A stretch of DNA of 64,000 nucleotides, from positions 137,947-201,946 of the forward strand of contig ADNK01000862.1 in NCBI GenBank assembly GCA_000320545.1. The letters run 5' to 3'. Shown piece by piece: positions 1 through 20,946 of this stretch; the stretch's first letter is position 1; each line of letters begins with the position of its first letter. The stretch comes from Bigelowiella natans CCMP2755 (Eukaryota; Protista; Cercozoa). The translations under genes and the position numbers were made by a program. A model generated the notes under the pieces. It ran no database searches and had not been told where the DNA came from. It worked only from the letters and a program-made list of their open reading frames with translations.

Positions 1-1319
1 GACGGTCGTCAGTGTTCCGACACGAGTTTGACCTCATCGACAAAGCGCTCATGGAGACGCCTGGATGGCAAGGCTACCAAGGCGAGCGCAGCCTGGCAAA
101 TCTTCTCCACTTCTCCCCCCCCTCCAACACCAAAAGTGGCAACGAAGATAGCGACGCTGCTGCTACTGCCGCGGAGATCATGTTCCAAGATGCATCTGTG
201 CTGCAGCCGGTGATGTTTGCTCTTGAATACGCGCTTGCCTCTTGGTTCGTTGCGCACGGAATCAGGCCCCAGGCCACCCTGGGTCACAGCTTAGGTGAGA
301 TAGCGGCCTTTTGTGCTGCCGGGAGCCTCACGCTCCAAGACGCGTGCCTTCTAGCTGTGGGCCGTGGAAAGGCAATGAAATCTCTGGTAAGCGGCAATGA
401 CGGCCAAGGCCGTGGCGGGATGGTAGCCGTTCGTGCTTCGGAGAGCGATGTTAAAGAGGTGCTCAATGCAAGCGGATTTTCTGGTCTTGTGATCGCCGCC
501 GTGAATTCCCCCCTCGGAGTTGTCGTCTCTGGCGAAATAGCGCAGATAGAGCGCGCGGTCCGCGTGTTCAAACAGGAGAAGAAGTGGAAGGCCAAGCAGC
601 TGGATGTGAGTGTCGCATTTTCCATCATCGTTCACCCTTTCGTAGCAGTGATGAAAGAGTGTGTAGCTCTGAAATGAGAGCTTAGCTGTAGATGATATTG
701 ATGATGAAGATGATGCCAAAAGAGAACAACAACACAACAGCAAAAGAAAAGTAGGACACGATCGTCATGCTCATACATTACTAATGGCGCTGATGCGAGT
801 CCTCTGTCATTCTCAACTGTCCTTTTGAAACCTTTTTTCACACTCGAGTCTTCTCTGTTTTTGAACCGACACACCTTCTGCACCGTTGGCTGTGTACTTA
901 CATCTATGTAGGTATCAGCTGCCTTCCACTCGCCTCTGGTCTCCCCATGCCTGGCGTCTTTGCGGAAGGCTGCCGAGAAAGTGAAAATCCTCCCTCCCCA
1001 TCACGGCATCCGCCTGCTATCTAGCGTGGATGGCAAGGAGGTAAAGGGAGGGGAGGATGCAGCAGAATACTTTGTGCGACAGGCAAGGAGTCCTGTGCGG
1101 TTCATGGAGGCACTGACTGCGAGCAAATGCAACGTGACGTTAGAGATTGGCCCCCAGCCACACCTCTCCGTCCATGCGGAGCCTGTGTTCGCCTCACATG
1201 GTGACGTGAAAAAGCAGGAAAAGAAGACCAAGACCAAGAATTCTAGGCAACGTGGCCGCATGTTTAATGTAATTCGCACTCTGCGCAAAGGAAAGGACGA
1301 TATCAATCAGATCTTCCAG
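1..1319 (+). other. PKS acyltransferase (AT) domain, probably malonyl-CoA type
   Basis: LQPVMFALEYALA, active-site GHSLGE (282-299), conserved Arg in RGKAM, IAAVNSP..VVVSG, spliced VSAAFHS, Q..SPVRF, LEIGPQPHL. Confidence 0.92.
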
Positions 1320-1407
1320 GTAATAGTCATGGGAGGGGGGGGGGAGCAGATTTGATGTCATCCTCGTCGTCAGTCGATAGAACAAGTTACAAACAGCATA
1401 TCTAACA

Positions 1408-1451
<44 letters not shown>

Positions 1452-2442
1452 ATCTTCTGTCGGCTAGGCCCTTGCATCACTCTATCGCTCTGGAGTCCCT
1501 TTGAACATGCGCGCGCTTTTCCTCCGATTGCAGCAGGAGGAGGAGGAGTACCAGCAGAGAGAGGAAGAGAAAGAGGAGGGGAAAGGACAACCGCAGCAGC
1601 AGCAGCAGCAGCAACGACAACGACAACAATATTTAGTGCGGCTGCCACCATCTGGACTTGCCCGGAAGAGGTACTGGATCGATCTTCCTGGAGTGCCCTC
1701 GCCACCACAACTCTTTCAACACAGCTACGAGGAAGAAGCAGCAGCCAAATGTGACGGTACCGAGAGTGTGTTCCAGTGTACGTGGGAGGAGGATAAGGAC
1801 CAGGAGAGATTTGCAGCTGTTGGTGGTGCTTCAGGCAAGAGCTGGGTAGCAGGAGCATCGTCATCAACGTCGTCATCAATCGTAGTAGTGACAGATAGAA
1901 AGCTAGGGCCATCATCTTACGAATCTACTCATCCAACAACCAAATCATCATCATCACGATCACCATCTTCGTCGCTCTTCACAAGGACGCTGCTTAGTGC
2001 CTTGGACACGAAGGTTGTCATTGTCGTTGTCGTCATCGTCGTCTTCGTCGTCTTTGTCGTCGTTATCTTTGTCATCGTTGGTCGTCTACGCTTTCTTCTT
2101 TTTTCATTTTAAATTGGCAGCGGAACTAGTAGAGCAGTAGGTAGCAGCTATCAGAAGAAGCAGTAGAAGGAAAGGAATTAAAAGAAGAAGAAGAAACACG
2201 TACTGGTAAACTAGGAAAAAGTATGAACTCCCACGTAGCGATGTTGACCGGTACGTTCGGGGATGATGGTGGCACTCCTACCATCTATTTGTTCTACCTG
2301 CAGTTATCATTTTTTGATTGATGTATTTAGTGGGTGGAGAATCGTCCCAGGAGCCTCGCAGCGGCAAACGAGCTGTTAGATCGCTGCTCTGTCGACGGGA
2401 AGCAACGAGGAGACACCATCGTCTACGTGCAGCATCAGCAGG

Positions 2443-2479
<37 letters not shown>

Positions 2480-4732
2480 GAAGAAGAAAGAGGTAGGCGA
2501 AGGCCTTGTCTCCTCAACATTTGGACCTCTATTCTTCCTACTAAAGGCTCTACAATTGCGCCGCGAATCCTCGCGGCCAAAGCACCTCATCGTGGTTACG
2601 TTCGGTGCACACGCTACTCTCTTCGAGGAGCAGCGATCGCCATCGTCATTATCGCAATCGTCTTCCCCTTCGTTCTTCTCAACAATCTCCGGCTCGATTC
2701 TGCAGGGCTTGTGCCGATCCTCACGCATGGAGTTCAGGGGGAGTCTGAGCATCCGACTCATCGATCTTCCTGCATCAGCAACGACGCCAACAGCAGCGGT
2801 GTCGTCATCGGTGGCGATAAGAGCAGCAAATCGAGTTGCTACGGAGGTGTTTGACGTGGTCCGTCTCGGTGGAACTGATGATGCTGCTGCTGGCATTCCT
2901 GACGTGGACGTGCTGTACCTTCCCGCAGTGCAGGAGGGGGGGGAGACGGCAGGTAGCAGCAGCACCAATGCCAGTGACAGCAATACCCATGGTAGAGAGA
3001 TGGGTATGAGGCGCTTTGTGCGCCGTCTAGAGGCCGTGGGTCGTGCCCACGATTCTGCCATTCCTCGCCATCTTGGCCGCCGTTTCGATGCATCGCCATC
3101 ATTGCCGTTTCCATTGTCTCCCTCTCCCCGTGGTCATGTGAATGATGGAGTTAAGCGCAGCACATACGCGATCACGGGCGGGACTGGAGCATTAGGCCTC
3201 GTGATGGCTTCATGGCTGCTAAGACGAGGAGCACGGCAAGTCTTGCTGCTCTCGCGATCTGGCAAGGTCCATGACTCCAACGCGCACCTCTACGCCGCTG
3301 CAGAAGCCCTCGTGAGGAAGCAGCAGCAAGAGGAGGAGGAGGAGGAGAGGGTGGATCGGACGGAAATGAAGGACGCAAAGGAGGGCGGTGCCGTACCGCC
3401 AAGATCAACAACAATAGGAGGGCGGTTGAGTATAGTGAAGTGCGACGTGAGTGATAGGAAGGAGGTGTTCCGATTCGTTCGGCGTGTGAGAGTCAACCTC
3501 GCAGGGGTCATCCACTGCGCTGGCGTGCTCGACGACGGGCTGCTCCAAAACCTGACTATCGACCGAGCGCACAAGGTCCTGGTCCCTAAGGCCGTTGGCG
3601 CGCAATGGCTGCACGAAGCAGTGCTGAAGTATATCGAAGAAGCAAAAGAGGGGGGGGGGCATCGTCGTCAGCGGTTGAAGATGTTTATGCTATTCTCATC
3701 CGTGACGAGTTTGATGGGCAATGCTGGCCAGGCAAATTACGCCGCAGCCAATGCGTTCCTGGACGGTCTAGCACGACACAGAAGGAGGTTAGGACTGAGG
3801 GCTCTCAGCGTGCAATGGGGGCCCTGGGCAGACGTTGGGATGGCAGTCGCTACTGTGGTAGTAGTCATTACACTAGTAAAACTTGCAAAATATCAAGAAG
3901 AGCAAGTCAATACATATTCGTGAAAATATGAATCCCCCTCTCCTCCCCTCCCTTCCTCCCTACCTCCCTCCCTCCCTTGCGCTCTCCTCTCTGTGGACCC
4001 AAGTGTGGGTGTGCAAACAGCCGCAGAGTTGTCCAAACAAACTTCTTCATGGTCATCATCATCAGCAGCAGCAGCAGCATTTTTCACTAATCAAACCCCG
4101 TATTTTTTTTGTCTTGGTTGTCCTTAGCTGGCCAATACGCGTAGCCAAAGCAAGTCGCTCTACGTGGCCATGACGCCTCCGCAGTGCCTTGCACCTCTTG
4201 ACGGCCTCCTTCTTATGGAGAACGAAGACTTCGCAGCGGGAGGAGGAGGAGGAGGAGGAGGAGGAGGAGGGGGGGGGGGGGGGGAGGGGGAGGAGGAGGC
4301 GAAGGATAGCAGATTCTACGTCGATTACGCTGTTGTAGCAATCTGTAGATTCCAGCAGCAGCCCTACTCCTCCTCCCCCCTCCCTCGACTATTCAGCCGC
4401 ATGCCTTACTATCGGTCCTTCCTCGCTCGCTCGCTGCCCTCTGCTGCTGCGACTGTGGAGATGGCAACAACACAGGCACAGCAACACCGTCGTCATCAGC
4501 ACACTGCCACCACAACTAGATTGCTTCCTGTCGTGAATGAGAAGGAGGGGGCGATCGAAGGGATGGAGAAGAAGGGTAACGTGGTAGTAAATGGAGGTGC
4601 TACGAGCCGCGATAACGTTGCACGAGAATGTATAGCAATTCTCGCGGAATTTGTCAGTGACGGGATTTCACTTTCCGAAGATACGGAGCTCATGGACCTG
4701 GGCATTGACTCCCTTGATTGGACCGAGGTCAT

Positions 4733-4774
<42 letters not shown>

Positions 4775-5419
4775 ACACCACCGTGTCATCGATATCCATA
4801 GCATGCGTGCGCGTCCTCATCATTCTCATTCTGCCTCCATATTTCTACCAACACTACTCAGGTTTTGGGCCAGGTGAACCGTCGAATGCAAGTGCACGCA
4901 ATGCCCACGTTGGTCCTAGAGATAACCGTTGTACGCGACCTTATCGAGTGGGTGGCGGGGCAGCATGTCCAAAATCACCAGAGCGTCTCCACTACTACGA
5001 AGAATGCTAAGAGCTATGATGACATTACGAGGCCGATGCAGATGGGACCTTCCCAGCTACTCGTCAAACAGTCCAATAATGGAGCATTCAGCAGCAACGT
5101 CGCTGCTACCACTACCACCACGTCGCCCTTTTCCTCTCCATCATCAGCCACTGTAATGAGAGGATTCGAGAGACTCTCTCCGATGTCTGCTCAAAGGAGG
5201 GAGGAGGAGACGAAGAGGAAGAGCATCAATCTCAAAGATATCACACTCGGTGTCATCGATGTGGTAGTTTCTGGTGGCTTTGGGGAGCAAGCAGACATCG
5301 TAGACGTAAAGGAGGAGACAGACCTCAACGAGCTTGGGATCGATTCGCTGGACTTTGTTGAGTAATCCTCGCCCATCACCACACACACATAATATTGATA
5401 TATACATGTATTATATATT

Positions 5420-5483
<64 letters not shown>

Positions 5484-7976
5484 GCTGGCATGCTATCTCG
5501 TTTAAAGTAACGTCAACGTCCTCTCTAGCATCATCACTATCAGCGCCATCATCATTATCACCACCGTTGTTGATGCTGAGCATGAAAACTATGCAATGTA
5601 TGCCCAGGCTGCTCCGAGCGGTGGGTACGCGATTTGGCGTGGACGCTCCTCCTACGCTCGTTCTTGAGGTTCAGTCGGTCGGGCAGCTCGCAGCTTACGT
5701 GCATGGGCAGTTGACGGAAGGAGAGATAAGTGGTAGGGAGGACGACGAAGAGATTGGAGAAGGGGACCGCCTCCACGAGTCCTCGCACAACAACTCTGCT
5801 TACGACTCAAAGGCGGCAACGTCAATGCATCAATCACTACTTGGTCGGGATGATGGGAAGCAGCAGCCCCTGTCCTCTTTTTCCTCGAAGCCGGTTTCTC
5901 CTGAGCAGAGGAGAGCGCTGCAGCTCGAGCACGAGTTGAACGTAGTCATGATGCCCCAGGGTGTCACCCAGATGGCGGTCAATATTCTAGGCTCGCTCCT
6001 ACGTCTGAGCGTGTATGCAGCAGGCTTTGTACCCATCGTCCTCATCGAGGAGAGAACGCACTTTTTCTCGGAAAGGTTTTCAGAATAATGATGATGGCGA
6101 TGATGGTGGTGGTGATAATAACGATGATGGTGATGGTGATGATGATGATGATGATGGTTGCTTGCTCTTGGGCGATACGAACACTAAAGGTATAAACCAT
6201 ATGCGACAGAGTTGTTAGGAGATCAGGAAAACGAAGAGAAAAACCTAACGATATTGTCAATCTTCATTGATGTTAAAAATCTTCTTCTGCTACAGGTATA
6301 ATAGGGTAGAGGCACGCTCTGCATTGGAGCTTGCCGTGTGGTTCAGCGGAATGCTAACGCTCTGGACAGCGTGCTCCATGATCGCGCTCATAATTTTCAA
6401 GTGGCTTATCGTGGGCAGATATCGAGAGGGGAACTTCCACAGGTACAGCTGACAAAAAGGAGCAGAGTATCGAGCATATTCTCTCGTTGCCGTCCTTACG
6501 GCGGTAGCAACCGTGTCGTAGTAGTCAAAGATTTGGAATGTTAAGAAATGTGACGATAATGATGATGATTATTTATTTACTTAATTACTTACTTGCTAGG
6601 TGGTCATGGGAAGGTGCGAGATACGGGCTGTATGACCTTGTAGGGGGGCTGGACGGGCCTATTGGCTGGGTCTTCAACTCGCTTCCAGACCCCATTCAGA
6701 GAACGTATGTTGAGCGACAACAAACAACAACAGCAAAAAAAAAAACAATAATGAGATCAAGAAGAAGAAGAAGAAGAAGAAGAAGAAGAAAGTGGGATCC
6801 AAAAGAGAATAACACTACGATGTCGCTAGTATATCGCCAACTATAGTTACATGCCATTATTCAACTCAACTCCTCCTTCCTCTCCTCCGTACTCCTCCCT
6901 CTCCTACTACTACCACTACTACTACTATCACTACTACTACTTCCGATTACAATCCCCTTTGCAACCCCCGCAGGTATTTTCGAGCGCTAGGGGCAACCAT
7001 AGGCTCGGATGTGACGCTGCACGGGGAGATCACCACCGGTTATGACCTGATCAAAATAGGCAATGGAGCTGTCATCGAGTCCGGCTCATCGCTGAACCCA
7101 AGTAATTACTTAACTGAAATAAAATCTCATCGTTCGCCACCATCATCAATAGCAATATCAGCATCAGCATCAGCACCAGCATCATCAACCTAACAGATGG
7201 TTTCCCCAACACCAGGCGTAACGGAGGACGGCGTTTTCGTGCAATACGCGCGCATAACCGTGGGTGCGGAGAGCTTGGTAGCAATCCGATCAAGGGTCGG
7301 CCCAGGCGCGTGCCTCGGCCAACGCGCAATGCTCGCACCCTATGCCTTTGCCCAGGGCTACGTGCCACCACTCTGCGTTGTCACCGGGGAGAATTCCTAC
7401 CTCAAGAAGCCCAATAGTCCTGGCTACAAACGCGTGCCTCAGAGCGCGCTTGCATTCCCCAGAGGCGGTGTTACGATGTTCTGCCTGGAGGCGGTTGCGT
7501 TCATATACCTCGCCTTTTGTAGCGGACTGTGCATTATGTCCGGCTTCCTTGTGCGCGCCGCGGTTGCAAAGGCGATCTGGGAGGGCATTGACAAAGATGG
7601 CGAGGAAGACGGAGGGGGGGGGGTGATTAAGTGGGACTTCTGGTCTATCACGATGGTTCTCACGATTGCACTTCTAGGAGCCATGCAGGCCTGTGTTTTC
7701 CCAGTCGCGCTCATCAACAAGTATCTCTTCACTGGCCGCGTCCGAGCGGGCCGACGAGCACTCACGCAGCTTTTGTGCGTGCGCCACAAGGTTGCAGGCC
7801 GCTTGATCGCGCTCGGTGATATGATCTTGCTGGCCTACTTTGAATCGACACCTGTGCAAACCGTCTGGTAGTAGATTGAACATCAACTCGTTAACGCAAG
7901 CATGACTATAGTTTCTTCCTCAATATCTCATTGGCAATAATGACATCTATCACGCACGATTCCATCTGTCCACACA

Positions 7977-8030
<54 letters not shown>

Positions 8031-10090
8031 ATCTCCCCTAACTTAAGAAAAAGGAGCCTCCTGTCTCTGTATGCTTGAATGCACTGCTGTTCCAATAATA
8101 TGATTACGATAAATGAAGGTACTGGCTCCTGGGTGCCAACTTAAAGATGTCGTCGATCGTGAGCTCGTGGGACGGCGTGCAAATCGCTCCGGATCTTCTT
8201 ACCGTAGGCCGCGACGCATACATAGGCAACGCGCCCTATATCGGGTTTGTAACAGTGCACAAAGAGAGAATGGAGGTGAGCTTTGACCCTATCGTCGTAG
8301 AGGAGAAAGTCTTTGTTGGGCCGTTCTCCCATCTTGCCGCCGGCACGCATATCCAACGCACGGGCGCGGTCTCAGCGATGGCGATCCTCAAGCGTAACGA
8401 AAACGTTCGGAGCTTTACGACAAGGGTTGGCTATAGGGCAAGCGTATCATACCGGCCGGAGGGCATCTACGCCCCGATGACGCTCTATACGTTCATCCTT
8501 GTCTCTCTCAGCTCGCTTCACATGTGCATGGAACTAGGTGCCGTCGGGCTCCTCTTCGCAGCCGTAGAGTACGTGCTCTTCAACCCGGAGAAGCTAGGCC
8601 TGCCCAAGTACGGCGCCAGTAATAGTGTCGTGAGAAACCACGGCGAGTGGATCATGATGATGACAGCTGTCGTCCTGGCGGTCCTTAGTGTGCTCTCCTT
8701 GCTCATCTCCATCGTGTATATTTTCATTGCTTTGGCTGTGAAATGGCTGACGATGGGTCGCGTCGATCCCGAGCGCAAATACCCTTTGCGAGGCAGATAC
8801 CACGCGATGTGGGTATTCAATCTCCACCTGATGTACCGGGTTAACGGCATCCTGGGCGCGCTCAAGGAGACTGGCATCGTGTCATACGTGTATCGATGGT
8901 ATGGGGCACGTGTGGGTCGCAACGTGAGATTCTCCGGGCTCGGCTCTTTATTCCCAGAGGCTGATATCTACGACATCGGTGACGGCGCGTTCATTGGATG
9001 CGCCGCGTATGGGCATAACTTCCTGAGAGGGCACCTTCGATTTGAGCCCATCGAGATAGGGAAAGGCTGCAGGCTAGTGCGCTCCGGGACACAGGTCGTT
9101 CCTGGTGTTCGACTGACAGAAAATATCGATATCGGACCAGGCCTCAATCTTATCCTTCCTGGCCGTTATGACTCGCCTGGAATGAAGCTCATTGGCATCC
9201 CAGGCCGACCATGCGTACGCGAGCAAAGACGGCGCAAACAGCGCCCAGGAGGGGGAAATAGGGAGAGCGAGGATTTTGACAATATTAAAGAGATAAAGAG
9301 AGCCGATACCCTCTCTGGAGAGCAGAAAGGAACGAAAGAGAGTGCAATCCCCCGAGCCTGGGTACGTAAGGACTTTCTACAATCAGCTGCTAATCATGAA
9401 CAAGGGGAGAACTTCATTAACACGAGTTTTAATCCGGAGCTTTACGACGACGCGCTGCTTCTTGGCGCTGCATCACCAGAGGCATCCTCTACCACTCTCT
9501 ATTGGAGGAAGAAGAAAAAAGGACAGGGATTCTGGAACTCAATCCGATTTGGCATCTTCAGCAACAATGAGGAGGAGGTGGTGGATAGCGGCAGTTACTA
9601 TGCACTCAATGATGGGGGGGGAGCACAAAATGGTAAAGACACCACGATTCATATCAAGCCCAAGAAGAATGACGGCCAAAATATCGTAAATAGCGGACGC
9701 AGTAGCAAGGATTACAGTTCACAACAAGATATAGTTGATGAGGTTGACTTCGGAGAAGAAGACATAGAATCCCTCTATAACGTTGTTACCTCCGGTAAGG
9801 GTAGCATAAATGGTAGTAGTGATGACAATCATGGCTATCTTGGTAGCAAGAGTTACTCCATGAAGGGTCGCCACGCCTCCAATTTTTCCGTCCTCCACGA
9901 AGACGATAACAACGATGAGATGCAGGGTAAAGAGCCGAAGGAAACAAAAAATAACGTCGGAGGTTTAGTCAGCTATTTCTGGCGGGGCGAAAGCAACAAT
10001 AAGAATCGGAATAAAGCCATCAAACGCAAGATGAAGCTGGACCCGGACATGACTCGTGGACTTCTGGATAGCAGTACCACTGATAAATAG
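1..10090 (+). CDS. Type I polyketide synthase, 5'-truncated by the window edge: AT-(psiKR)-KR-ACP-ACP-Pls-like (TIGR02353-type) membrane terminal domain. Hand-spliced exons: <1-605, 912-1319, 1468-2013, 2331-3857, 4128-4727, 4862-5361, 5608-6075, 6296-6442, 6600-6704, 6974-7101, 7216-7867, 8119-10090
   Basis: All 11 GT-AG junctions keep phase and rebuild motifs split by introns: LD|VSAAFHSP, FQ|ALASLYRSGV, DSLDWTE|VLGQV, DSLDFVE|LLRAV, HR|WSW, T|YFRALGATIG, W|YWLLGANLK. AT GHSLG at 282-296; post-AT linker LPPSGLARKRYWI; KR motifs GGTGALG, LDD and NYAAAN; two LGIDSL ACPs. The junctions at 2013/2331 and 3857/4128 are the least certain. Confidence 0.9.
3159..3857 (+). other. PKS ketoreductase (KR) catalytic domain, B-type (LDD motif)
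   Basis: YAITGGTGALG (NADPH site, 3177-3197), LLSRSG, CDVSD, HCAGVLDDG (LDD 3528-3536), K in PKAVGA, SSVTSLMGNAGQANYAAAN (Tyr codon at 3738), SVQWGPW. Confidence 0.93.
4614..5714 (+). other. Tandem acyl carrier protein domains ACP1 and ACP2
   Basis: DLGIDSLDWTE (Ser codon at 4710) and ELGIDSLDFVE (Ser codon at 5345); both continue after an intron into PTLVLE helix-III motifs. Confidence 0.88.
5398..5482. repeat. (TA)n microsatellite in a PKS intron
   Basis: Direct reading. Confidence 0.95.
5940..9215 (+). other. Pls/PosA-like NRPS terminal domain (TIGR02353-type): three TM-hairpin plus beta-helix-like repeats
   Basis: Three repeats, each with hydrophobic helices followed by KWLIVGRYREG / KYLFTGRVRAG / KWLTMGRVDP, then YFRALGATIG / YWLLGANLK / YRWYGARVG, then DLIKIGNGAVI / DLLTVGRDAYI / EADIYDIGDGAFI, then ITVGAESLV / IVVEEKVFVG / IEIGKGC. 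The last repeat has GHNF and ends LIGIPG. This matches the Pls-family consensus as I recall it. Confidence 0.82.
7971..8028. repeat. Compound (CA)n(GA)n microsatellite in a PKS intron
   Basis: Direct reading. Confidence 0.95.
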
Positions 10091-11128
10091 ATCTCTAATA
10101 GCCTTACCAATCAAGCTAAGCCGCTATGTTTTGTCGGTATATATTGTTTTGTCAGTCATGTATTGCGCACAGTCCGGTATCTACTTATACACAAACGAAA
10201 TATGAGACGGATGTAATGATGTGATTGAATCTTTTCAATGGTCACCTACGTAGCTAGCTCCTTTTGATTCGCGTACGTATGCGTATCGTAGCAATATAAA
10301 GCTAGCATTTCTTACACACACATAGCTAGCTAGCTAGATAGGCATATATGAGACGGATGTCATGAATGAAAATTAAATTACATTTTATAATTGGTCATCC
10401 TAGAGTAGCTATGATAATAGCAGATATGTAATTACTTGTGTCTATTATCATGGCAGCTGCGGCTACACGTAGATGGGCGTATGCTAGGAGCACAAAGCTT
10501 AACAAAACATTACATGCGTGCCAAAGCGCTGCGCTGTACGCGCCATACCTAGATATCTGCACCTTCCAGGCTATATGGCATTCTGCGTGGAGGAACTACA
10601 TGCTATGCATGCACTTAATATTCCTTTCGTAGATTTGGCAAAGATCAATGAGTAATGTAACTTCTTTCATATTTCATATTACGCTGAGAGTTGTGCAATA
10701 AATCAAGAGGTTTGAACCCTAATAGGAAACTATATGACCACATGTTCTTTAAAAAAAACAAGTATGAGGATATAGTAATCCCTGATTGGTCCTGTTTTGA
10801 AAGAGGCAATTCAAATTCCGCCAAGAATCGTCGTAAAACATGTCAATTGTTAGAGGTAATCTCTCTACCTTTGAACAAAAAAAGAATTAAATATGAAGTG
10901 CTACTTCATCTTGAATGTATAAAAAAGTTTTTTGCGACTCCCTCTTCGGGAGTGCGGCAAGGACGGATCTTCTCATTATTATAATCATCATTGTTGCTTA
11001 GTCATCATCAACACAATAGGCGGGTCAATTGTAGATGAGATGAAACTGGTTTGTTAAAATTGTAAAGCATCACTTTTCTGGCTGGCATTATCTTGAAATT
11101 TGTGCCGATTTTCCTGCAGCAGCGTAGA

Positions 11129-11899
11129 TCAGATGAGAATGACGGAAATGGGTAAGAGATTCTCTCTCATCGTCTTTCGCCTTCGCCTTTGTTCTGTCTC
11201 CACAGTACACGTATACTCGTAATGATCCACTCACATCACTACGTTAGGAGGTTCATCCCGGAACAATTTCTGTCCCGATTTCATGTAGTGTGTGGTCTCT
11301 ACTTCCACATCGCTCGAGCTCATGTTTTTCTTCACTTCGCGGTTTGAGATGAGCTGGTCGACGACCCAGAAGAACATGACATTGCAGAGGAATGGCGCGA
11401 CGATCATAATCATCACTAGCTTTAACTTAGGGTTAGGATCCATCCAGAAGAACATTGCGTGCCCAAGCTGATCTATTTGGGGAGCCAAAACGAACTCGCA
11501 CGCAGATAAAATCAGCTTCACGGCGACCATCAAGAACGAAAACCCGATTAACTGCAGGAAGAACGGCGACCACTCGTTAGGTTCGCCGTAGTGGCCACAT
11601 TGCCGTGAGGAAAGTTGATACCTATGAAGTAGGCAAACAACATTTAATTTATATTACAATTGTGTGTGTGTATTTTGTATGTATGTTTAGTGTGAGTTGA
11701 ATATGTGTGAAATATGAATCACCTTTGCACTGCCTTTTCATATGGTTTTAGGAGGAGCCAAACGAGCACTACGCCAAAGAAGATATCGACGCAGAAGTTG
11801 ACGAAGTACACGTCGCACTCATCGGCTTTGGTTGTGCCGCCACCCCATATTAACAACTTGGCTGCAATAAAGAAACGAGGTAAACATCAGATTTTATTT

Positions 11900-11941
<42 letters not shown>

Positions 11942-12430
11942 ATGCTTAGTACACAGGGACTCCCAGTACACAGGGACTCCCAAACTTCAGAGATGAAGTG
12001 AGGGGTGGATTTAGTGAGTTATTAAAGTTAATTAAAACTTACCTAGGAAAATGTTGAAGAAGTGGATAGTGACACCGCTAACAGCTTGCTTGGTCGTGTC
12101 GAACACGAAGGATCGGATATCCCTAGAGTATTGTACAGATTATTAGATACATAATATGAAATGTAGATGTGCGTGCATGTGAGTGCATGTGTGTATGTGG
12201 GTGTGTGTGAAGGTTATAAGAATCCTTCATCCTGAGCGTACCTCTCTGTATTTTCGAATTTAAACTTGATCCATAGAGTAGCAAATGCTGAAAAGCCCAA
12301 GATTCCTTGAATCTAGAATTTTGTAAAAATTGGTCATTACATTAGCCCCAGTGTACACCGCAGAAATTCAGTTTTTGATATAATCACTTATCTCACCAAG
12401 TAGTCAAAGGCAGAGGAAAGAAGCCGACAT
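11129..12430 (-). CDS. STIMATE/TMEM110-family multi-pass membrane protein; multi-exon, 5' exons possibly extending to ~12842
   Basis: Exon peptides CRLLSSAFDYL, IQGILGFSAFATLWIKF, FVFDTTKQAVSGVTIHFFNIFL, DECDVYFVNFCVDIFFGV, CGHYGEP, KLVMIMIVAPFLCNVMFFWVVDQLI; both ends approximate. Confidence 0.78.
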
Positions 12431-14158
12431 CTGATATTTTAGAAGAGTTGGAATTAGCCACAACAAACGCAGGTAACTTTATAAGACATTATTCAATTTC
12501 AAAATTTTATCCTAACCTTGCTGGCTCAACTCCTCTTTCATTCATAACCGATTCAGGACTGGAGAAGACTCCGCTCGGTGAACTTCCTTCAAGAGTATTG
12601 AGCACCTCATGCTCGATGTTTTGCAATCCCCCCACCTTTGAATATACAATCATTTTTTCGGGTGAAATATTGAGGAGGCTTTTATATTGCGCCTCATTGT
12701 GGAGCAAATGTGGTCCGCTTCACAGGTTCTACTATTTCTAAAAAATACTTGAACATTACCAGCGGCATCGACATCGCTAAGATGGTAGCAAACAGCACGG
12801 GAAGGCCCGGCTTACATAATTTCCCAACTTTAAGTTGCAGCATCCCTGCTTCGTCCGTCTGTTTTCTTCCCTCGTGCTGTGGTCAGGGAGATGGGGGCTA
12901 GATGGACCTTACCAACACGATTTAAGACTAGGTTGTGTAGCTTGCTGAATGAAACTTACCGTATTTTAGATGTATTACTGAAAAACCCATTCCTTATTAC
13001 CTTGCGACAACATCTATCTTCTAAATATGAGAAATGATAACTGGGATACTTCGGTATGAAGGAATATCGTTAATGGTTGGAATTTTCGCAAAGCTTTTGT
13101 AGGTCAAGTGTTGTGATCTTGCTTATTGTAAATAGAAGATTGCAAATCTTAGATATTTATGCGATAAATATTTACCTCGCATCAATCAAGAAAAGCGGTG
13201 TGAAATCCTCTCAAAACAAAATTCGAGTGCCATTTCATCAGATATTCGCACTTATTTGGCTGAGTTAGATCTTTACCGTAACGTGATCCAAGATGAAAAA
13301 GGCGACAACCATGTCTAAATATTTATGCGAAAAAAATGGAAAATCACGCATATTATTCTATAATCTTTCTTTTGAAATGAAATATTGTAAGAAATGACAA
13401 GTAGAAAGCCCGCGCTGTTGTGAAATTACGTCTTAGGCTTAAGCAATTTTCAAATAATGGGATTTTGTTCCAGAATTCAATGATATTACCCTTATCTTAC
13501 ATAAAACCTACTACATTTGTCATTGTCATTTGAACACCAACTTCGCAAGAAATGTGCCAAATGAACAGCCTTGGTAGATCTAGTTCAATTAATTCAGGTA
13601 AAATCAGTATAAATGAACAAGATGAACACCACAATGTCCATTTCTGTGAAAACAAAACTCATCGAAATCCATTTCATGCCAAATCAGTGACAATCTCTCC
13701 AAGCACGCACACTCATACAATTAATCTCATTGAGACATAACAAAGAGGATGTCGTTATATAAAAATTAAGGGTAGATAATCCTATCATATTATTTATTGT
13801 CGTAGGACGTGATACCCCTCACATTATTATTATTTTAGGTTGTTTAAAATGGGCAAAATTGGGATGCGGCTCGAAGTAACTCTGGAGATCTCTGGGATCT
13901 CAAAGGTTGGGGTGTTGTTTCTGTTGTTTTTTCACACGGTTCGGAATGGCGGTCTACACGTGGAGTGAGAAACGCCAGTAACGCACACGAGCCATTCCAA
14001 GAGTAGGAGCTAAGACCTGAATAGGGGCTTGTGCAACATGGCCAGCGAGCAGTATATTGAAAAACAGGTAGTCGACCGAAATTGAGAGCTACAATTCGTG
14101 GATCGAACATAGTCAGAATAGGAGTTAGGGGGAATTAAGATTGGTGGATAAATTTTAG

Positions 14159-17100: not shown

Positions 17101-20100
17101 AGAACCATCTCATTAAGCTCTGTGGCACAAATAGCACCTGGAAGGCGCTACTGTTTATCCAGATTGCATCATTCCGCCGCGAATGTCACGAGCAGCATGA
17201 GCTCCTGCTAAAGGCCTCTCAGTGCCTTCGTGCCGCTGAGGAGGAGGAGCGACATATGCTCACGCGCGTGGGTATATCATTGGTAGATACAAGAGAAACT
17301 CCGACATTCGCCCAGCAGTTTCTGCTTAAACGGCCCACGCCTCCGAGACATGCTGAAGTAGAAATTGAGAAGATTGTGCATTCATCAGAAGGAGATGAGG
17401 CAGGCAAGGGAGACGAATACGACAGAAAGTCGTCGTCGAAGATTCTTCCGGCGCCATTGCTGGTGACACGGAGTTTGTACAGCGTTGTCCTACGGCCTAT
17501 CATTCCGCAGTGGTACATCAACCGGTTTCGTCTTCGCGGGTTCATCGTGTATGGTAAAGAAGCGAGCACGGGGACCAACGTTTCTCAAATCGACTGCGAG
17601 CTCCTTGGGACTGGAGTCGAGCACCAGCTGCCGCCCAAAGGTGCCAACATGGTAGATGTGGAAGTATCATGCCTGGATATCAACACCCCTTACTCATTCG
17701 CCGTGGTTGGGGTGAACAAAGACGGCGAGATCGTGGCGGACCGTGGGGCCATCGGAGCGACATCCAAGCCAATCCAAACTGCCCTTCCCGTACCGCTGCA
17801 TACGTGCTGGGGGTTTCTAGCGGTCGCGGCGGCCAAGGCGAACTACCCAGCGGTAGCGGGATTTCTGGATAAAGCTCTTCATCGCTTCGCCCGCGGACGG
17901 TGCCAGGTTGAATGCATACCGACCGCTTGGAAGGACCGCCTGCACTTCCAAATGCTGGATTCTCGGGCCATTTACCTCGCTCCAGAGCCCAACCTGCACC
18001 TTCTGGTGAAGCTGCTGCTGTTGCGCTCTGACACATACGATTCCAAAGTGCCCTCCCTCAAGAGCGGTAAATATGTGTCGCCTATCGGACACGTCGAGGG
18101 CCACGTGCTTAGACAGGCCCGCCCCCTCCTTCTGGCGCTCCAGGTGGCCATGGTCGCCCGAGACGAGGAAGTCGCGAGTAGTATCATCGAGCGCATCTAC
18201 AACCATATCGTGCAGATATTACCGGATTGCGAGCGATCGGGGTTGGGCCAAGCCACCCTTCAGGTCCTCATTCCATGTTATATCGGCGCTTCCTTGATCC
18301 GCGAGAAGATGGCACCGAGAGATTGGACAGAGTCCTTCAACGCCGCTACAGCACGTGTGCTGTTCGAGCTTACCAAGCTTTATCGAGGACTCGGCGAGTC
18401 GTCATCCCAAGGGGATAAGGATAGTAATATTATGACCCGTTTCATCAAACGCCATCTCTCGCACCTACAGAGGGCCTCTATCGAGGATGAGAAGGAAGCG
18501 GCGGCTGCCAAGGAGAAGGCTGCAAAGCTCCAAGAGGACTTTAAGAAGCGCCGAGCAGAGGCACTTGAGGAAGCCAAGCAGGAAATTGAAGCTATCCAAA
18601 AGGAGCGAGAAGAAGAGAAGAAGAAGCGGGAGGAGGCAGGGGGAGGCAAGAACGATGAAGAAGAGCATGAGGACGACGATATGCTTACAGCGGAGGAAAT
18701 TGCCGCACAGCGCGTACCGGACGTTGATATATCCTTCGACCCAGACCGCCGCAGCTGCTATCGGTGCATATCTGAAGACAGGGCGCTTGCCATCTTCCTC
18801 ATTCTCCTTGACAATGAAGCACTCAGCAAGGAAGGTAGCGAGCTCTGCAAGGTCAGTTGGGCCTCATGGTTGCGATTTAGCAAGAATACCCTGCGTGCCG
18901 CAGGCTTCGACGAGAGACTTGAGGGTTGGAAAATGAAGAAAAACGAGGGAGAAGATGACTTTGAGGCCCAGATATTCGAAGCGATGCAGAAGGCAACTAG
19001 AACTGGCGGTGGGAAAGAGGGTACCCTGGACGATGTACACGCCAAATTGTCACAGAAGAAGGAACATGTGCAATACCCCATGCTCCTTGCGAGGCTCTGC
19101 AGCACCCTGCTTCTCACTTCCACCGATTCAGTGGAAGGGGACGCTGCCTCCTCAACCTACTCCAAGGCTTTAGGATGGCTCCAAGGGCAGAACGGTGGTG
19201 ATAGTAATGTACCCCCCCTCCAGCTTCAAAACCCTTCTCTGCGCTACGATGCACTTGCTGCGGTTCACGAGCAGATAAAACGTGTCGTAGCAGAGCATGG
19301 GCCATGCACACCCACTGTAGCGATTGATACGGGAGTGAGCTCGTCGGACTGGATGCACAACTTCGTGGTTACCGGGCGCGTAAAGCCGACCTTCGACCCA
19401 GCCGGTATCGTGCACAAGTGCGGACCAAGCTCCGACGACCCCAATGGTGGAGGCTTCTTGCTGGTGTTTCGCAAAGGCCACCTCTGCTTCAGGTTCGCAG
19501 GGCAGCCATGGATCAAGGGACCAGCCATGAACATGGGGGAATGGAACAATTTCTCCTGCGAGTACAACCGAACCCACCTCACGCTCACGTGCAATGCGAC
19601 CTCAAGCAAGGCTGAGGCTGGCCTGATCGCCTTCAACACCGTGCAGCTCCGCTTCGCCTTGGGAGACTTTGGAAAGCATTTTCGCGGTGAGATTCATGGA
19701 ATCAAACTCGTCCGCGGCGAGACGATGGCTCATCAGCAGACAGCAACAGCCGATGTCGAGGAGAAAGAAAAAGAGGAGGAAAAGAAAGATGGAGAGGAAA
19801 GCAAAGACAACGCAGAGAAGACAACGCAGAAACTGACAGCATACCAACTACTGTGGTTGAGTGAAATCGAGCGCCTTAAAGCCATTTGCTCACAGGAGAA
19901 GCTTATTCGCCTTCGCTGCACCAACCGGCAAGCTCTTTGGGAGATCGTAAAGGCTAGTGGAGACTCGACGGCAGCGGTAGATGAAGGCGACAAGAAGAAG
20001 GGAGGAAGCGATGGAAAAAGTGAGGGCTCAAACGAGGAGATCCCGTCCAAAGGGCAGATTCTTAGCACTCTCGTCTACGGGTGTGTTGGCATCGACGAGC

Positions 20101-20946
20101 ACGTGGACTGGGGCGCTCTTGAGTCCGATGACCTTGGCGTAGAGTGGCGTAAGATGACCGATTTCGCTGCCTCCCACTCCCTCGCTCCACAGCGAGCGAA
20201 GAAAGAGAATAAAGATGGGGAAGGTGACCAGGATGCAGAGGGAAAAGGAGAAGAGAAGAAGACTGAGGAAGAGAAAAACGATGGAGATGGAGAAACGGCA
20301 GAAATGAAACAAGAAGACCCCGTCTCCAAAGCTGCAGCGATGAAGGAGCTTCTTCGCAAGAAGTTCAAACCGATGCATGTGGCGGAGGTCCTTGTGGCGA
20401 TTGATATCTGGCGGAGCGCCTCCGTAGCCTGTATGGCTGCCAGCTCAGCACGTGCGTGGATTCAGCTACAGAATACGGTGCGTGTATTCTGGAACTCTAT
20501 ATCATCTATGCGAGCCAGACCCTACCGCGTGGCACAGCTTTCAAGGATAGAGGGTGCTCTCCGTCAGCAGGGGGGAAAGAAAGGAGATGAAAATGCTAAG
20601 AGCAATCATGCTGCGCCTGTTGTAGAGCACTTGCGAAGGATGGGCGAGGCAATCCTCGAAATGCTGGCTAGACTGTCGGCTGCAGCCGAAGAGGAGGAGA
20701 AGGAGGAGGAGATGGAAGGGGGGGAAGAAAGGAAGAAGCATGACAATCAAAACTCCCCCTCCACGTCATCAACCTGTTACCCTTCTATTGTTGTGCAAAA
20801 TAGTCCAGAGTTCGCATCCGCCAGAGCCCGAGAGCTGGGGCCGTATCCGAGCGTTAATAATTCTGAGGAGAAGTTGCTCGGCAATAAGTGCAAGGTACTT
20901 GACTGCGTTTACTGGCACTTTCTTCCCTCACACTCTGTAGCAAAAC

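What the first reader, a model, noticed from the sequence alone, without database searches (positions are those of the whole stretch)
1..10090. Type I PKS ending in an epsilon-poly-L-lysine-synthetase-like membrane domain: candidate membrane-bound polyketide/polyester polymerase
Seen: phase-consistent splicing joins AT-KR-ACP-ACP directly to three repeats of [TM helices - KW/YL..GR - (R)xxGAxxG - DL.xIG - beta-helix-like segment], with no thioesterase, reductase or condensation domain. Established: this TM/three-soluble-repeat C-terminus characterises Pls-type single-module NRPS-like enzymes (A-T-terminal domain; TIGR02353), where it polymerises carrier-bound monomers into homopolymers such as epsilon-poly-L-lysine at the membrane. 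It normally follows an adenylation domain, not a PKS module. Inference: the final module has an intact B-type KR and no recognisable DH between AT and KR, so the ACPs should carry a 3-hydroxyacyl chain. A Pls-like domain could ester-link such units into a polyester, or acylate an acceptor, and release the product at or across a membrane. I do not know of a characterised eukaryotic PKS with this release strategy.
Basis: partly seen in the sequence, partly recalled or inferred. Interest (0 to 1): 0.92.

Follow-up and report, generated by a model that had tools for sequence, protein, structure and literature searches.

The report
Polyketide synthase with polylysine-synthetase-type membrane end
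This protist gene really does fuse a one-module polyketide synthase to the membrane-embedded, three-repeat end domain otherwise known from bacterial poly-lysine synthetases; the same unstudied fusion occurs in diplonemids and pelagophyte algae and may make or attach hydroxy-acid esters at a membrane.

Summary
Spliced RNA contigs from three studies join the ACP region to the membrane region through seven GT..AG introns. They give one open frame of 1323 codons (4862 to the stop at 10088-10090), with poly(A) at 10207.

The 3' part holds three collinear repeats of [TM pair - KWxxxGR - GAxxG - DLxxIG - left-handed beta-helix]. This is the Pls/PosA end-domain layout. The repeats match named bacterial Pls/PosA proteins (E 2e-21) and TIGR02353. 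Scores lie far below that model's curated cut-off, so it is a distant relative, not an equivalog.

Upstream lie an acyl-CoA-ligase-type A domain, KR, ACP, an intact KS, a malonyl-type AT, a B-type KR and two ACPs. There is no DH, TE, R or C domain.

The gene is not unique. The same A-KR-ACP-KS-AT-KR-ACPn-Pls-like protein occurs in Diplonema, Artemidia, Lacrimia, Rhynchopus, Aureoumbra, Aureococcus and marine metagenomes. Their end domains form a separate clade (SH-aLRT 98) from the A-T-type enzymes, including this genome's own paralogues. I found no paper on it.

The function is inferred only: release of (R)-3-hydroxyacyl-ACP by O-acyl transfer, possibly iterative (polyester).

The parts
3..1352 (+). 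Acyltransferase (AT) domain in two open pieces (3-674, 912-1352). It has the active-site motif GHSLGE and an AAFHS motif of malonyl type.
   Evidence: Pfam PF00698 2e-24 and 3.9e-6; motifs read; collinear with Diplonema P0007 residues 2829-3135.
3159..3833 (+). Ketoreductase (KR2) catalytic subdomain inside the open frame 2331-3920. It has the NADPH motif GGTGALG, an LDD motif (B-type) and the catalytic Tyr in YAAAN. The preceding ~276 residues are the structural half. No DH lies between AT and KR.
   Evidence: PF08659 2.8e-51, residues 277-501; motifs; no PS-DH hit; only one off-frame HxxxGxxxxP match.
4608..5011 (+). ACP1 (motif LGIDSLD), split by the intron 4728-4861.
   Evidence: PP-binding hit; tblastn to P0004 residues 996-1092; intron worked out.
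5295..5710 (+). ACP2 (motif LGIDSLD), split by the intron 5362-5607.
   Evidence: PP-binding hits on both sides; joint 5361/5608 in three runs.
5975..6049 (+). TM helix 1.
   Evidence: Kyte-Doolittle window of 19 residues scoring above 1.5.
6296..7413 (+). Repeat unit 1: TM helix 2 (6330-6416), KWLIVGR, the linker exon 6600-6704, YFRALGATIG / DLIKIG (6974-7101) and beta-helix 1 (7216-~7413). Introns: 6443-6599, 6705-6973 and 7102-7215.
   Evidence: Unit-HMM hits: exon 6294 at positions 5-36 (3e-7), exon 6974 at 74-113 (5e-11), exon 7216 at 121-158 (1.5e-4). TIGR02353 positions 25-73 and 105-147. Joints.
7464..8446 (+). TM helices 3 (7464-7577) and 4 (7638-7721), then repeat unit 2: NKYLFTGR, YWLLGANL, DLLTVG and beta-helix 2. 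Intron 7868-8118.
   Evidence: TM helices; unit HMM on exon 7216 at positions 3-70 (9e-7) and exon 8118 at 76-175 (1e-11); joint 7867/8119; AF2 model with beta-helix strands at residues 27-110.
8489..9214 (+). TM helices 5 (8489-8581) and 6 (8639-8764), then repeat unit 3: KWLTMGR, RGRYHAMW, YGARVGR, PEADIYDIGDG, YGHNF and beta-helix 3. Residues invariant in the PKS-linked clade include K208 (8741), R224, H228, W231, G262, G266, E280, Y297, H299 (9014-9016), F301 and P328.
   Evidence: Unit HMM positions 2-180, 4.3e-57; invariant columns of A1 and A2; AF2 mean pLDDT 84.3, pTM 0.81; Foldseek hits to hexapeptide O-/N-acetyltransferases, LpxD and gamma-carbonic anhydrase.
9215..10090 (+). Hydrophilic low-complexity C-terminal tail (~290 residues) and the stop codon TAG at 10088-10090. 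The tail is not conserved in relatives.
   Evidence: No family hits; homologue matches end near residue 370-390 of the exon.
10091..10207 (+). 3' UTR up to the poly(A) site.
   Evidence: Contigs end at 10207 followed by a run of A (tables 7 and 8).

Best explanation
One expressed gene encodes a membrane-anchored, single-extension type I PKS. Its layout is [ThDP-enzyme-like N-terminus, seen here only in homologues] - acyl-CoA-ligase-type A - KR - ACP - KS - AT(malonyl) - KR(B-type) - ACP - ACP - [2 TM + beta-helix] x3.

Shown:
- the fusion, at RNA and reading-frame level;
- intact catalytic motifs of KS, AT, KR and the ACPs;
- no DH, ER, TE, R or C domain;
- an end region that is a distant homologue of the Pls/PosA end domain, with the same six-TM / three-soluble-domain plan, whose soluble parts fold as left-handed beta-helices like hexapeptide acyltransferases.

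Inferred:
- The tandem ACPs carry an (R)-3-hydroxyacyl thioester made of a starter plus one C2 unit. It may bear a further hydroxyl from the loading KR.
- Two TM helices separate each pair of soluble parts, so all three beta-helix domains lie on the ACP (cytosolic) side.
- The end domain replaces a thioesterase. It releases the chain by transferring the acyl group to a nucleophile.
- Because the monomer carries hydroxyls and no obvious amine, the bond formed is most likely an ester.
- My leading version is iterative self-condensation into an oligo- or polyester that leaves through or along the TM bundle, by analogy with Pls. This version has roughly 0.4 probability; single transfer to a separate acceptor is about 0.3.
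For: - One transcript and one frame.
- Domain content and motifs.
- Triple repeat and TM pairs.
- Homology to named Pls/PosA proteins: P0026 at 2.2e-21, named.
- Relatives of the PKS-linked clade align end to end with TIGR02353: P0022 residues 258-934 on profile positions 39-695, E 1e-39; P0004 residues 1255-1951 on 48-694, E 1.9e-38.
- Beta-helix fold.
- The same architecture is kept in Diplonema (4912 aa), Artemidia, Lacrimia, Aureoumbra (3834 aa) and an ENA eukaryotic contig. The gene is collinear with the Diplonema protein, with 55% identity in A and 51% in KS. This argues for selection on the whole assembly.
- All three units are about equally conserved within the clade (about 29-30% mean identity), so none looks decayed.
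- Recombinant Pls itself forms esters with glycerol and PEG (PMC9606270), so O-acyl transfer is within the family's chemistry.
- From established knowledge: the beta-helix enzymes LpxA and LpxD transfer (R)-3-hydroxyacyl groups from ACP, and PHA synthases polymerise (R)-3-hydroxyacyl thioesters.
Against: - There are no biochemical data for any member of this clade.
- All characterised Pls-type enzymes make amide bonds from amino-acid monomers.
- The clade shares only about 25-30% identity with them and scores 58-137 bits against a 423-bit cut-off.
- The starter acid is unknown, so the nucleophile on the monomer is unknown.
- I could not inspect model coordinates, so the pseudo-trimer and the active-site placement of the invariant His299 are not verified.
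- RNA contigs reach only about 240 nt upstream of 4500. Continuity from AT/KR to the ACPs therefore rests on homologue collinearity.
Confidence: 0.5

Rival explanations
1. Single-turnover off-loading. The end domain transfers the finished 3-hydroxyacyl chain once to a different acceptor, such as a membrane lipid head group, sugar, amine or protein. The product is an acylated membrane or surface molecule, not a polymer.
For: - Beta-helix acyltransferases are typically single-transfer enzymes (Foldseek matches to SAT, MAT, GAT and LpxD).
- Pls accepts foreign alcohols as acceptors.
- The membrane location suits a lipid acceptor.
Against: - The complete six-TM / three-domain apparatus of a polymerase is retained.
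- Tandem ACPs suggest high monomer flux.
- Every characterised relative is iterative.
Confidence: 0.3
2. Amide-forming polymerase as in Pls. The starter carries an amino group, so the ACP-bound product is an amino-hydroxy acid that is joined by amide bonds into a polyamide.
For: It keeps the family's known chemistry. The conserved acidic and His residues are shared with A-T-type members.
Against: - The loading A domain is of acyl-CoA-ligase type. Its best matches are feruloyl-, fatty-acyl- and malonyl-CoA synthetases and MenE, not amino-acid adenylation domains.
- It is followed by a KR, which points to an oxo- or hydroxy-acid starter.
Confidence: 0.1
3. The end domain is mainly a membrane anchor or export conduit. 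Release occurs by hydrolysis or lactonisation without intermolecular transfer.
For: There is no direct evidence of transfer. A polyhydroxy acid could lactonise spontaneously.
Against: The motifs in all three soluble units are strongly conserved. Invariant K, R, H, W, E, Y, H and F appear, and the units are equally conserved. This is not expected of a mere anchor.
Confidence: 0.08
4. Artefact: two neighbouring genes (a PKS and a separate Pls-like gene), or a mis-assembly, wrongly read as one.
For: A public protein set holds only the last exon as a 647-aa protein (P0001).
Against: - Spliced contigs in runs of three studies bridge every junction.
- There is one open frame with no stop.
- Repeat units 1 and 2 are themselves split by the introns.
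- Intron-free or transcript-derived homologues carry the same fusion.
Confidence: 0.02

Closest known systems
Epsilon-poly-L-lysine synthetase Pls and the Pls/PosA family of single-module NRPS-like enzymes (TIGR02353 end domain)
   Same: - A carrier domain is followed by six TM helices in three pairs, alternating with three tandem soluble beta-helix (acetyltransferase-like) domains.
- There is no C or TE domain.
- The motifs KWxxxGR, GAxxG and DLxxIG are shared.
- Sequence homology is significant.
   Different: - The donor is made by a KS-AT-KR PKS module rather than an amino-acid A domain.
- There are two ACPs instead of one T domain.
- Scores are far below the family cut-off.
- It forms a separate clade.
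- The likely bond is an ester, not an amide.
- It is eukaryotic, with introns.
This genome's own A-T-Pls-like paralogues (contigs C3248 and C230; also TIGR02353 hits on C1602 and C2848)
   Same: They have the same triple-unit end domain.
   Different: - On C3248 and C230 they are preceded by AMP-binding domains in canonical A-T order.
- They show no BLAST-level similarity to the window's domain.
- They fall in the other major branch of the tree.
Uncharacterised orthologue-like proteins: Diplonema papillatum KAJ9444505.1 ('EryA1', 4912 aa), Artemidia motanka, Lacrimia lanifica, Rhynchopus euleeides, Aureoumbra lagunensis A0A7S3JQK8 (3834 aa) and Aureococcus anophagefferens KAK7232945.1
   Same: They share the domain order A-KR-ACP-KS-AT-KR-ACPn-[TM2-LbH]x3. 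The window gene is collinear with the Diplonema protein. Their end domains fall in the same clade.
   Different: - Identity in the end domain is only 27-35%.
- They have three ACPs against two here.
- The low-complexity tail is specific to the window gene.
- None has a known function.
Hexapeptide (left-handed beta-helix) acyltransferases, notably LpxA/LpxD, serine acetyltransferase and maltose/galactoside O-acetyltransferases
   Same: The soluble domains share the fold. From established knowledge, LpxA and LpxD take (R)-3-hydroxyacyl groups from ACP.
   Different: Those enzymes are soluble homotrimers that make a single transfer. Here three different copies sit in one chain and are interleaved with TM hairpins.
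PHA synthase PhaC (polyester polymerase)
   Same: Only the proposed chemistry is shared: polymerising (R)-3-hydroxyacyl thioesters into a polyester.
   Different: PhaC has an alpha/beta-hydrolase fold and uses CoA thioesters. No PhaC-type family was reported for any piece scanned. This is a 'works like' comparison, not membership.

Membership tests
Pls/PosA end domain (TIGR02353) | Six TM helices in three pairs alternating with three tandem homologous soluble domains | tested here: met
   Hydropathy; unit HMM mapping three collinear units; AF2 helices and beta-helices.
Pls/PosA end domain (TIGR02353) | Score at or above the curated cut-off of 423.1 bits | tested here: not met
   Last exon 58.6 bits. 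Whole-domain relatives of the clade score 105-137 bits. A bacterial control, P0026, scores 510.5 bits. The joined window protein was not scored, by instruction.
Pls/PosA end domain (TIGR02353) | Directly follows a phosphopantetheine carrier domain in the same polypeptide, with no C or TE domain | tested here: met
   ACP2 and TM1 lie in the same exon, 5608-6075. One frame runs throughout. No C, TE or R hits.
Pls/PosA family synthetase (whole enzyme) | A-T architecture with an amino-acid-activating NRPS adenylation domain next to the carrier domain | tested here: not met
   KS-AT-KR precedes the ACPs. The distal A domain is of acyl-CoA-ligase type.
Pls/PosA family synthetase (whole enzyme) | Iterative polymerisation of the carrier-bound monomer onto a free acceptor | not testable with these tools
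   This needs an enzyme assay or product analysis.
Type I polyketide synthase module | KS with the Cys-His-His triad, AT with GHSxG, ACP with the DSL serine | tested here: met
   DTACSSS, EAHGTGT and KSNIGH; GHSLGE; GIDSLD twice. Pfam E-values 1e-51 to 2e-24.
Type I polyketide synthase module | Canonical release domain (TE, R, or C/Dieckmann type) | tested here: not met
   None was found in the window gene or in full-length homologues.
B-type ketoreductase | LDD motif plus catalytic Tyr/Ser and an NADPH-binding glycine motif | tested here: met
   GGTGALG, VLDDG and SS..YAAAN read. The stereochemical outcome is inferred.
Hexapeptide / left-handed beta-helix acyltransferases | Left-handed beta-helix fold | tested here: met
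   AF2 pLDDT 84.3. Foldseek probability 1.00 to SAT, MAT, GAT, VCA0836, gamma-CA and LpxD.
Hexapeptide / left-handed beta-helix acyltransferases | Pfam Hexapep at or above the gathering score (27 bits) | tested here: inconclusive
   The window's last exon scores 17.1 bits. Homologues P0007 (35.9), P0010 (45.1) and P0196 (33.1) pass.
Hexapeptide / left-handed beta-helix acyltransferases | Trimer with active sites at subunit interfaces | not tested
   Three tandem copies suggest a pseudo-trimer. The pTM of 0.68 for P0022 is compatible, but the coordinates could not be inspected.

The most novel reading that the evidence does not exclude
The Pls-type end domain is a PhaC-unrelated, membrane-embedded polyester synthase. 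It would iteratively ester-link PKS-made (R)-3-hydroxyacyl-ACP monomers and extrude the chain. This would define a new enzymatic route to biological polyesters and a previously unknown polymer in abundant marine protists (diplonemids, pelagophytes and this organism).
Probability: 0.3. Interest if true: 0.9.

Novelty: new variant of a known kind. Interest (0 to 1): 0.78.

Why it matters
PKS chains are normally released by thioesterase, reductase or condensation-type domains. A conserved clade that instead uses the membrane-embedded polymerising domain of poly-amino-acid synthetases would add a new release or polymerisation logic to polyketide biosynthesis.

The donor predicted here is an (R)-3-hydroxyacyl thioester, the same kind of monomer that PHA synthases use. 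The family is therefore a concrete, testable candidate for a second, unrelated polyester synthase, or for a new class of acylated membrane or surface molecules.

It occurs in diplonemids, among the most abundant marine heterotrophic protists, and in brown-tide pelagophytes, so the product could matter ecologically. Diplonema papillatum can be transformed, which makes a knockout feasible.

For annotation, at least one public protein set holds only the last exon as a 647-aa protein, so the fusion is easily missed.

Tried and rejected
- tblastn of this genome's A-T-type paralogues against the window gave only E>=0.002 scraps, so they could not be used to define the exons.
- A sequence search of the PDB with the last exon found nothing meaningful. 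Foldseek found no whole-domain structure, only single beta-helix enzymes.
- Word-based search for homologous proteins found only the window's own protein, and only one extra full-length fusion with the Diplonema query.
Bacterial genomes were therefore not scanned for PKS-Pls fusions. Among the 150 best of 628 hits, the only PKS-linked ones were eukaryote-like.
- The protein-atlas search was busy.
- tblastn with bacterial A and PKS probes against the paralogue loci gave nothing. A-T order is therefore shown only for C3248 and C230.
- A DH motif scan gave one off-frame match, judged spurious.
- P0009 was too long for the look-up of encoding contigs. PMC4135771 is not held.
- The careful ML tree did not finish, so the quick IQ-TREE result is used.
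- The Pfam and NCBIfam scans of L013:8724-9929 did not confirm the ThDP-like N-terminus in this genome.
- Seven of the nine literature searches sought this fusion and found no description of it. The other two sought Pls structural and mechanistic background.
- Exons were searched one by one by reference, and only split codons and frame arithmetic were checked in script.
Full report
**Setting.**
The window is G000:C2875:137947-201946 of a 91-Mb, 3736-contig genome. The organism is a eukaryote: it has GT..AG introns and poly(A) tails, and myosin, calponin-homology and ankyrin genes lie on other contigs.

**Observation: domains.**
Open frames on the + strand carry the following:
- an AT domain at 3-674 and 912-1352;
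- a KR inside 2331-3920 (PF08659, 2.8e-51);
- PP-binding hits in 4128-4874, 4802-5362 and 5399-6085;
- in the last long frame, 8117-10087, the NCBIfam model TIGR02353 (Pls/PosA end domain) at 58.6 bits, E 3.7e-16.

Smaller frames in between also hit TIGR02353 in collinear order. Frame 6249-6449 hits profile positions 25-73, frame 6813-7190 hits 105-147 (E 2.2e-8) and frame 7194-7868 hits 157-324.

Weak TIGR02353 hits alone mean little. The model also rings in 13 of 14 control genomes, which I attribute to hexapeptide repeats. The rest of the case therefore rests on other evidence.

**One gene.**
Read laying on 4500-10400 showed spliced contigs in three runs from three different studies: X1 (4582 nt), X3 (4403 nt) and X13.
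- After resolving alignment ambiguities, the exons are ...-4727, 4862-5361, 5608-6075, 6296-6442, 6600-6704, 6974-7101, 7216-7867 and 8119-10207, followed by poly(A).
- All seven introns are GT..AG.
- The frame is continuous, with no internal stop, and no split codon is a stop. That gives 1323 codons from 4862 to the TAG at 10088-10090.
- ACP2 and the first TM helix lie in the same exon.
- Repeat units 1 and 2 are themselves interrupted by these introns. That cannot be explained by two adjacent genes.

One limitation: the contigs extend only about 240 nt upstream of 4500. Continuity from AT and KR to the ACPs is therefore supported by collinearity with single-ORF homologues, not by reads.

**Anatomy of the end region.**
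- Hydropathy gives six helices in three pairs: 5975-6049 and 6330-6416; 7464-7577 and 7638-7721; 8489-8581 and 8639-8764.
- I built a 180-position unit HMM from repeats found with the third unit. It maps three complete units in order across the exons.
- Each unit reads TM helix, then KW(L/I)xxGR, a helical linker, (Y/F)RxLGAxxG, DLxxIG(D) and beta-helix turns.
- The AlphaFold2 model of 8120-9250 has mean pLDDT 84.3 and pTM 0.81. It shows beta-helix, two long helices, short helices, then beta-helix.
- Foldseek matches the soluble parts to hexapeptide acyltransferases (serine, maltose and galactoside acetyltransferases, and VCA0836), to LpxD and to gamma-carbonic anhydrases.
- A model of a whole end domain from a clade member (P0022, Rhynchopus; pLDDT mostly 80-95 over residues 260-970, pTM 0.68) repeats this pattern three times. 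It likewise finds no whole-domain match in the PDB.
- After unit 3 comes a tail of about 290 residues that is low in complexity and not conserved. No TE, R or C domain is present.

**The PKS part.**
- The KS has DTACSSS, EAHGTGT and KSNIGH.
- The AT has GHSLGE and AAFHS, which is malonyl type.
- The KR has GGTGALG, the LDD motif (B-type) and YAAAN.
- Both ACPs have GIDSLD.
- No DH was found in the window or in any homologue.
- Upstream on L012 lie an A domain, a KR, an ACP and the KS.
- The A domain is of acyl-CoA-ligase type. Its best PDB matches are feruloyl-, fatty-acyl- and malonyl-CoA synthetases and MenE, and its best NCBIfam match is long-chain-fatty-acid--CoA ligase at 1.6e-93. It is not an amino-acid adenylation domain.

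**Relatives.**
- The last exon finds 628 proteins at E<=1e-3 among 1.84 billion representatives.
- Most are bacterial A-T-[unit]x3 proteins. One cluster is named 'Pls/PosA family non-ribosomal peptide synthetase' (P0026, 2.2e-21).
- The best hits are PKS-linked:
  - Diplonema papillatum KAJ9444505.1 (4912 aa);
  - Artemidia motanka (4400 aa);
  - Lacrimia lanifica (5022 aa);
  - a 5021-aa metagenome protein;
  - Aureoumbra lagunensis A0A7S3JQK8 (3834 aa);
  - fragments from Rhynchopus, Aureococcus, Cymbomonas and marine metagenomes.
- Pfam gives the same order in all full-length ones: (TPP_enzyme_N)-AMP-binding-KR-ACP-KS-AT-KR-ACPx3-Hexapep.
- A 2.9-Mb ENA contig whose neighbouring called genes carry chromatin, WD40 and flagellar Pfam domains, which I read as eukaryotic, carries the same series.
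- The window gene is collinear with the Diplonema protein, with 55% identity in A, 51% in KS and 27% in the end domain.
- In a quick ML tree of unit 3, the window groups with ten PKS-linked sequences and three pelagophyte-type ones in a clade with SH-aLRT 98. This clade is apart from all A-T-type sequences, including this genome's own paralogues.
- Within the clade the three units are about equally conserved, at roughly 29-30% mean identity.
- Unit 3 carries invariant K208, G213, R224, H228, W231, G262, G266, E280, D288, Y297, H299, F301 and P328.

**Membership.**
- Clade members align end to end with TIGR02353. P0022 residues 258-934 align to profile positions 39-695 (E 1e-39), and P0004 residues 1255-1951 align to 48-694.
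- Their scores are only 105-137 bits against a cut-off of 423.1. A bacterial control scores 510.5.
- So this is a homologous but distant clade of the Pls-type end domain, not an equivalog. The whole enzyme also fails the A-T criterion.

**Mechanism.**
What is shown is the architecture. The rest is inference.
- The ACPs should carry an (R)-3-hydroxyacyl thioester.
- The TM helices come in pairs, so all three beta-helix domains sit on the ACP side of the membrane.
- With no other release domain present, the end domain must off-load the chain.
- The monomer has hydroxyls and the loading domain is not an amino-acid activator, so ester formation is the most likely chemistry.
- Two facts from outside this gene make that credible. 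Recombinant Pls itself esterifies its product with glycerol or PEG (PMC9606270). By established knowledge, beta-helix enzymes such as LpxA and LpxD transfer (R)-3-hydroxyacyl groups from ACP.
- Whether the transfer is iterative or single cannot be decided here. I put iterative transfer (a polyester, as in Pls and with the same monomer type as PHA synthases) at about 0.4. Single transfer to another acceptor is about 0.3. The remainder goes to amide polymerisation, hydrolysis or lactonisation with an anchor role, and artefact.

**Novelty.**
Seven of the nine full-text searches looked for a PKS joined to a Pls-type domain and found no paper on one. The two others were for background on Pls.
- The proteins exist in databases as uncharacterised entries, for example one auto-named 'EryA1'. 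The architecture is therefore not new to sequence space, but it is undescribed functionally.
- It is best classed as a new variant of known kinds: a type I PKS combined with a Pls-type end domain.

Exons were used by reference.
- Earlier notes of this scan on the upstream loading module and on a ThDP-like N-terminus were used as leads. I confirmed A, KR and ACP upstream. I could not confirm the ThDP-like domain in this genome, although homologues carry PF02776 or PF00205.

Noticed in passing
window 10201-10221 and 10347-10367 (+); more than 600 places genome-wide: A short dispersed element, TATGAGACGGATGTAATGA(A/T)G, has at least 603 copies with up to 2 mismatches, against 0-1 for the reversed control. 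The PKS gene's poly(A) site (10207) lies inside it. In 3'-biased raw RNA reads, many reads match from 10203 after variable upstream letters and carry poly(A) after 10244. It looks like an element shared by the 3' ends of many transcripts.
   Followed up: partly
G000 contigs C3248 (4207-8682, -), C230 (2576-9118, -), C1602 (6900-11014, -) and C2848 (28490-30653, -): Four further loci carry Pls-type triple-unit end domains. On C3248 and C230 an AMP-binding domain lies upstream, which is the canonical A-T-Pls order. This protist therefore also has several NRPS-like homopolymer-synthetase candidates.
   Followed up: partly
P0021 (L023:63-9245), P0017/P0198, P0134: A variant architecture in marine eukaryote transcripts and metagenomes: KR-ACP-KS-AT-[TM2-LbH]x3 followed by a second AT domain after the membrane domain.
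   Followed up: no
L024 (ENA contig ctg1439, 2.9 Mb): 1-13777 and 19597-20715: In another eukaryote the orthologous gene begins with a ThDP-enzyme-like part (TPP_enzyme_M, weak). A ketol-acid reductoisomerase gene lies about 6 kb downstream. Together with the TPP_enzyme_N in the diplonemid proteins, this hints at an acetolactate-like starter, but it may be chance.
   Followed up: no
window 8147-10090: A public protein set (EukProt/MetaClust, P0001, 647 aa) holds only the ORF of the last exon, starting at an internal ATG. The fusion is therefore missed in at least that annotation.
   Followed up: partly
window 4730-4775, 2460-2500, 1560-1620 and the region L012:7235-7290: Long trinucleotide and low-complexity runs (CAG/CAT, poly-Q/E/G/S stretches, TA repeats) lie inside or beside the PKS exons and introns. 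One of them made the read aligner cut the 4728-4861 intron wrongly.
   Followed up: partly
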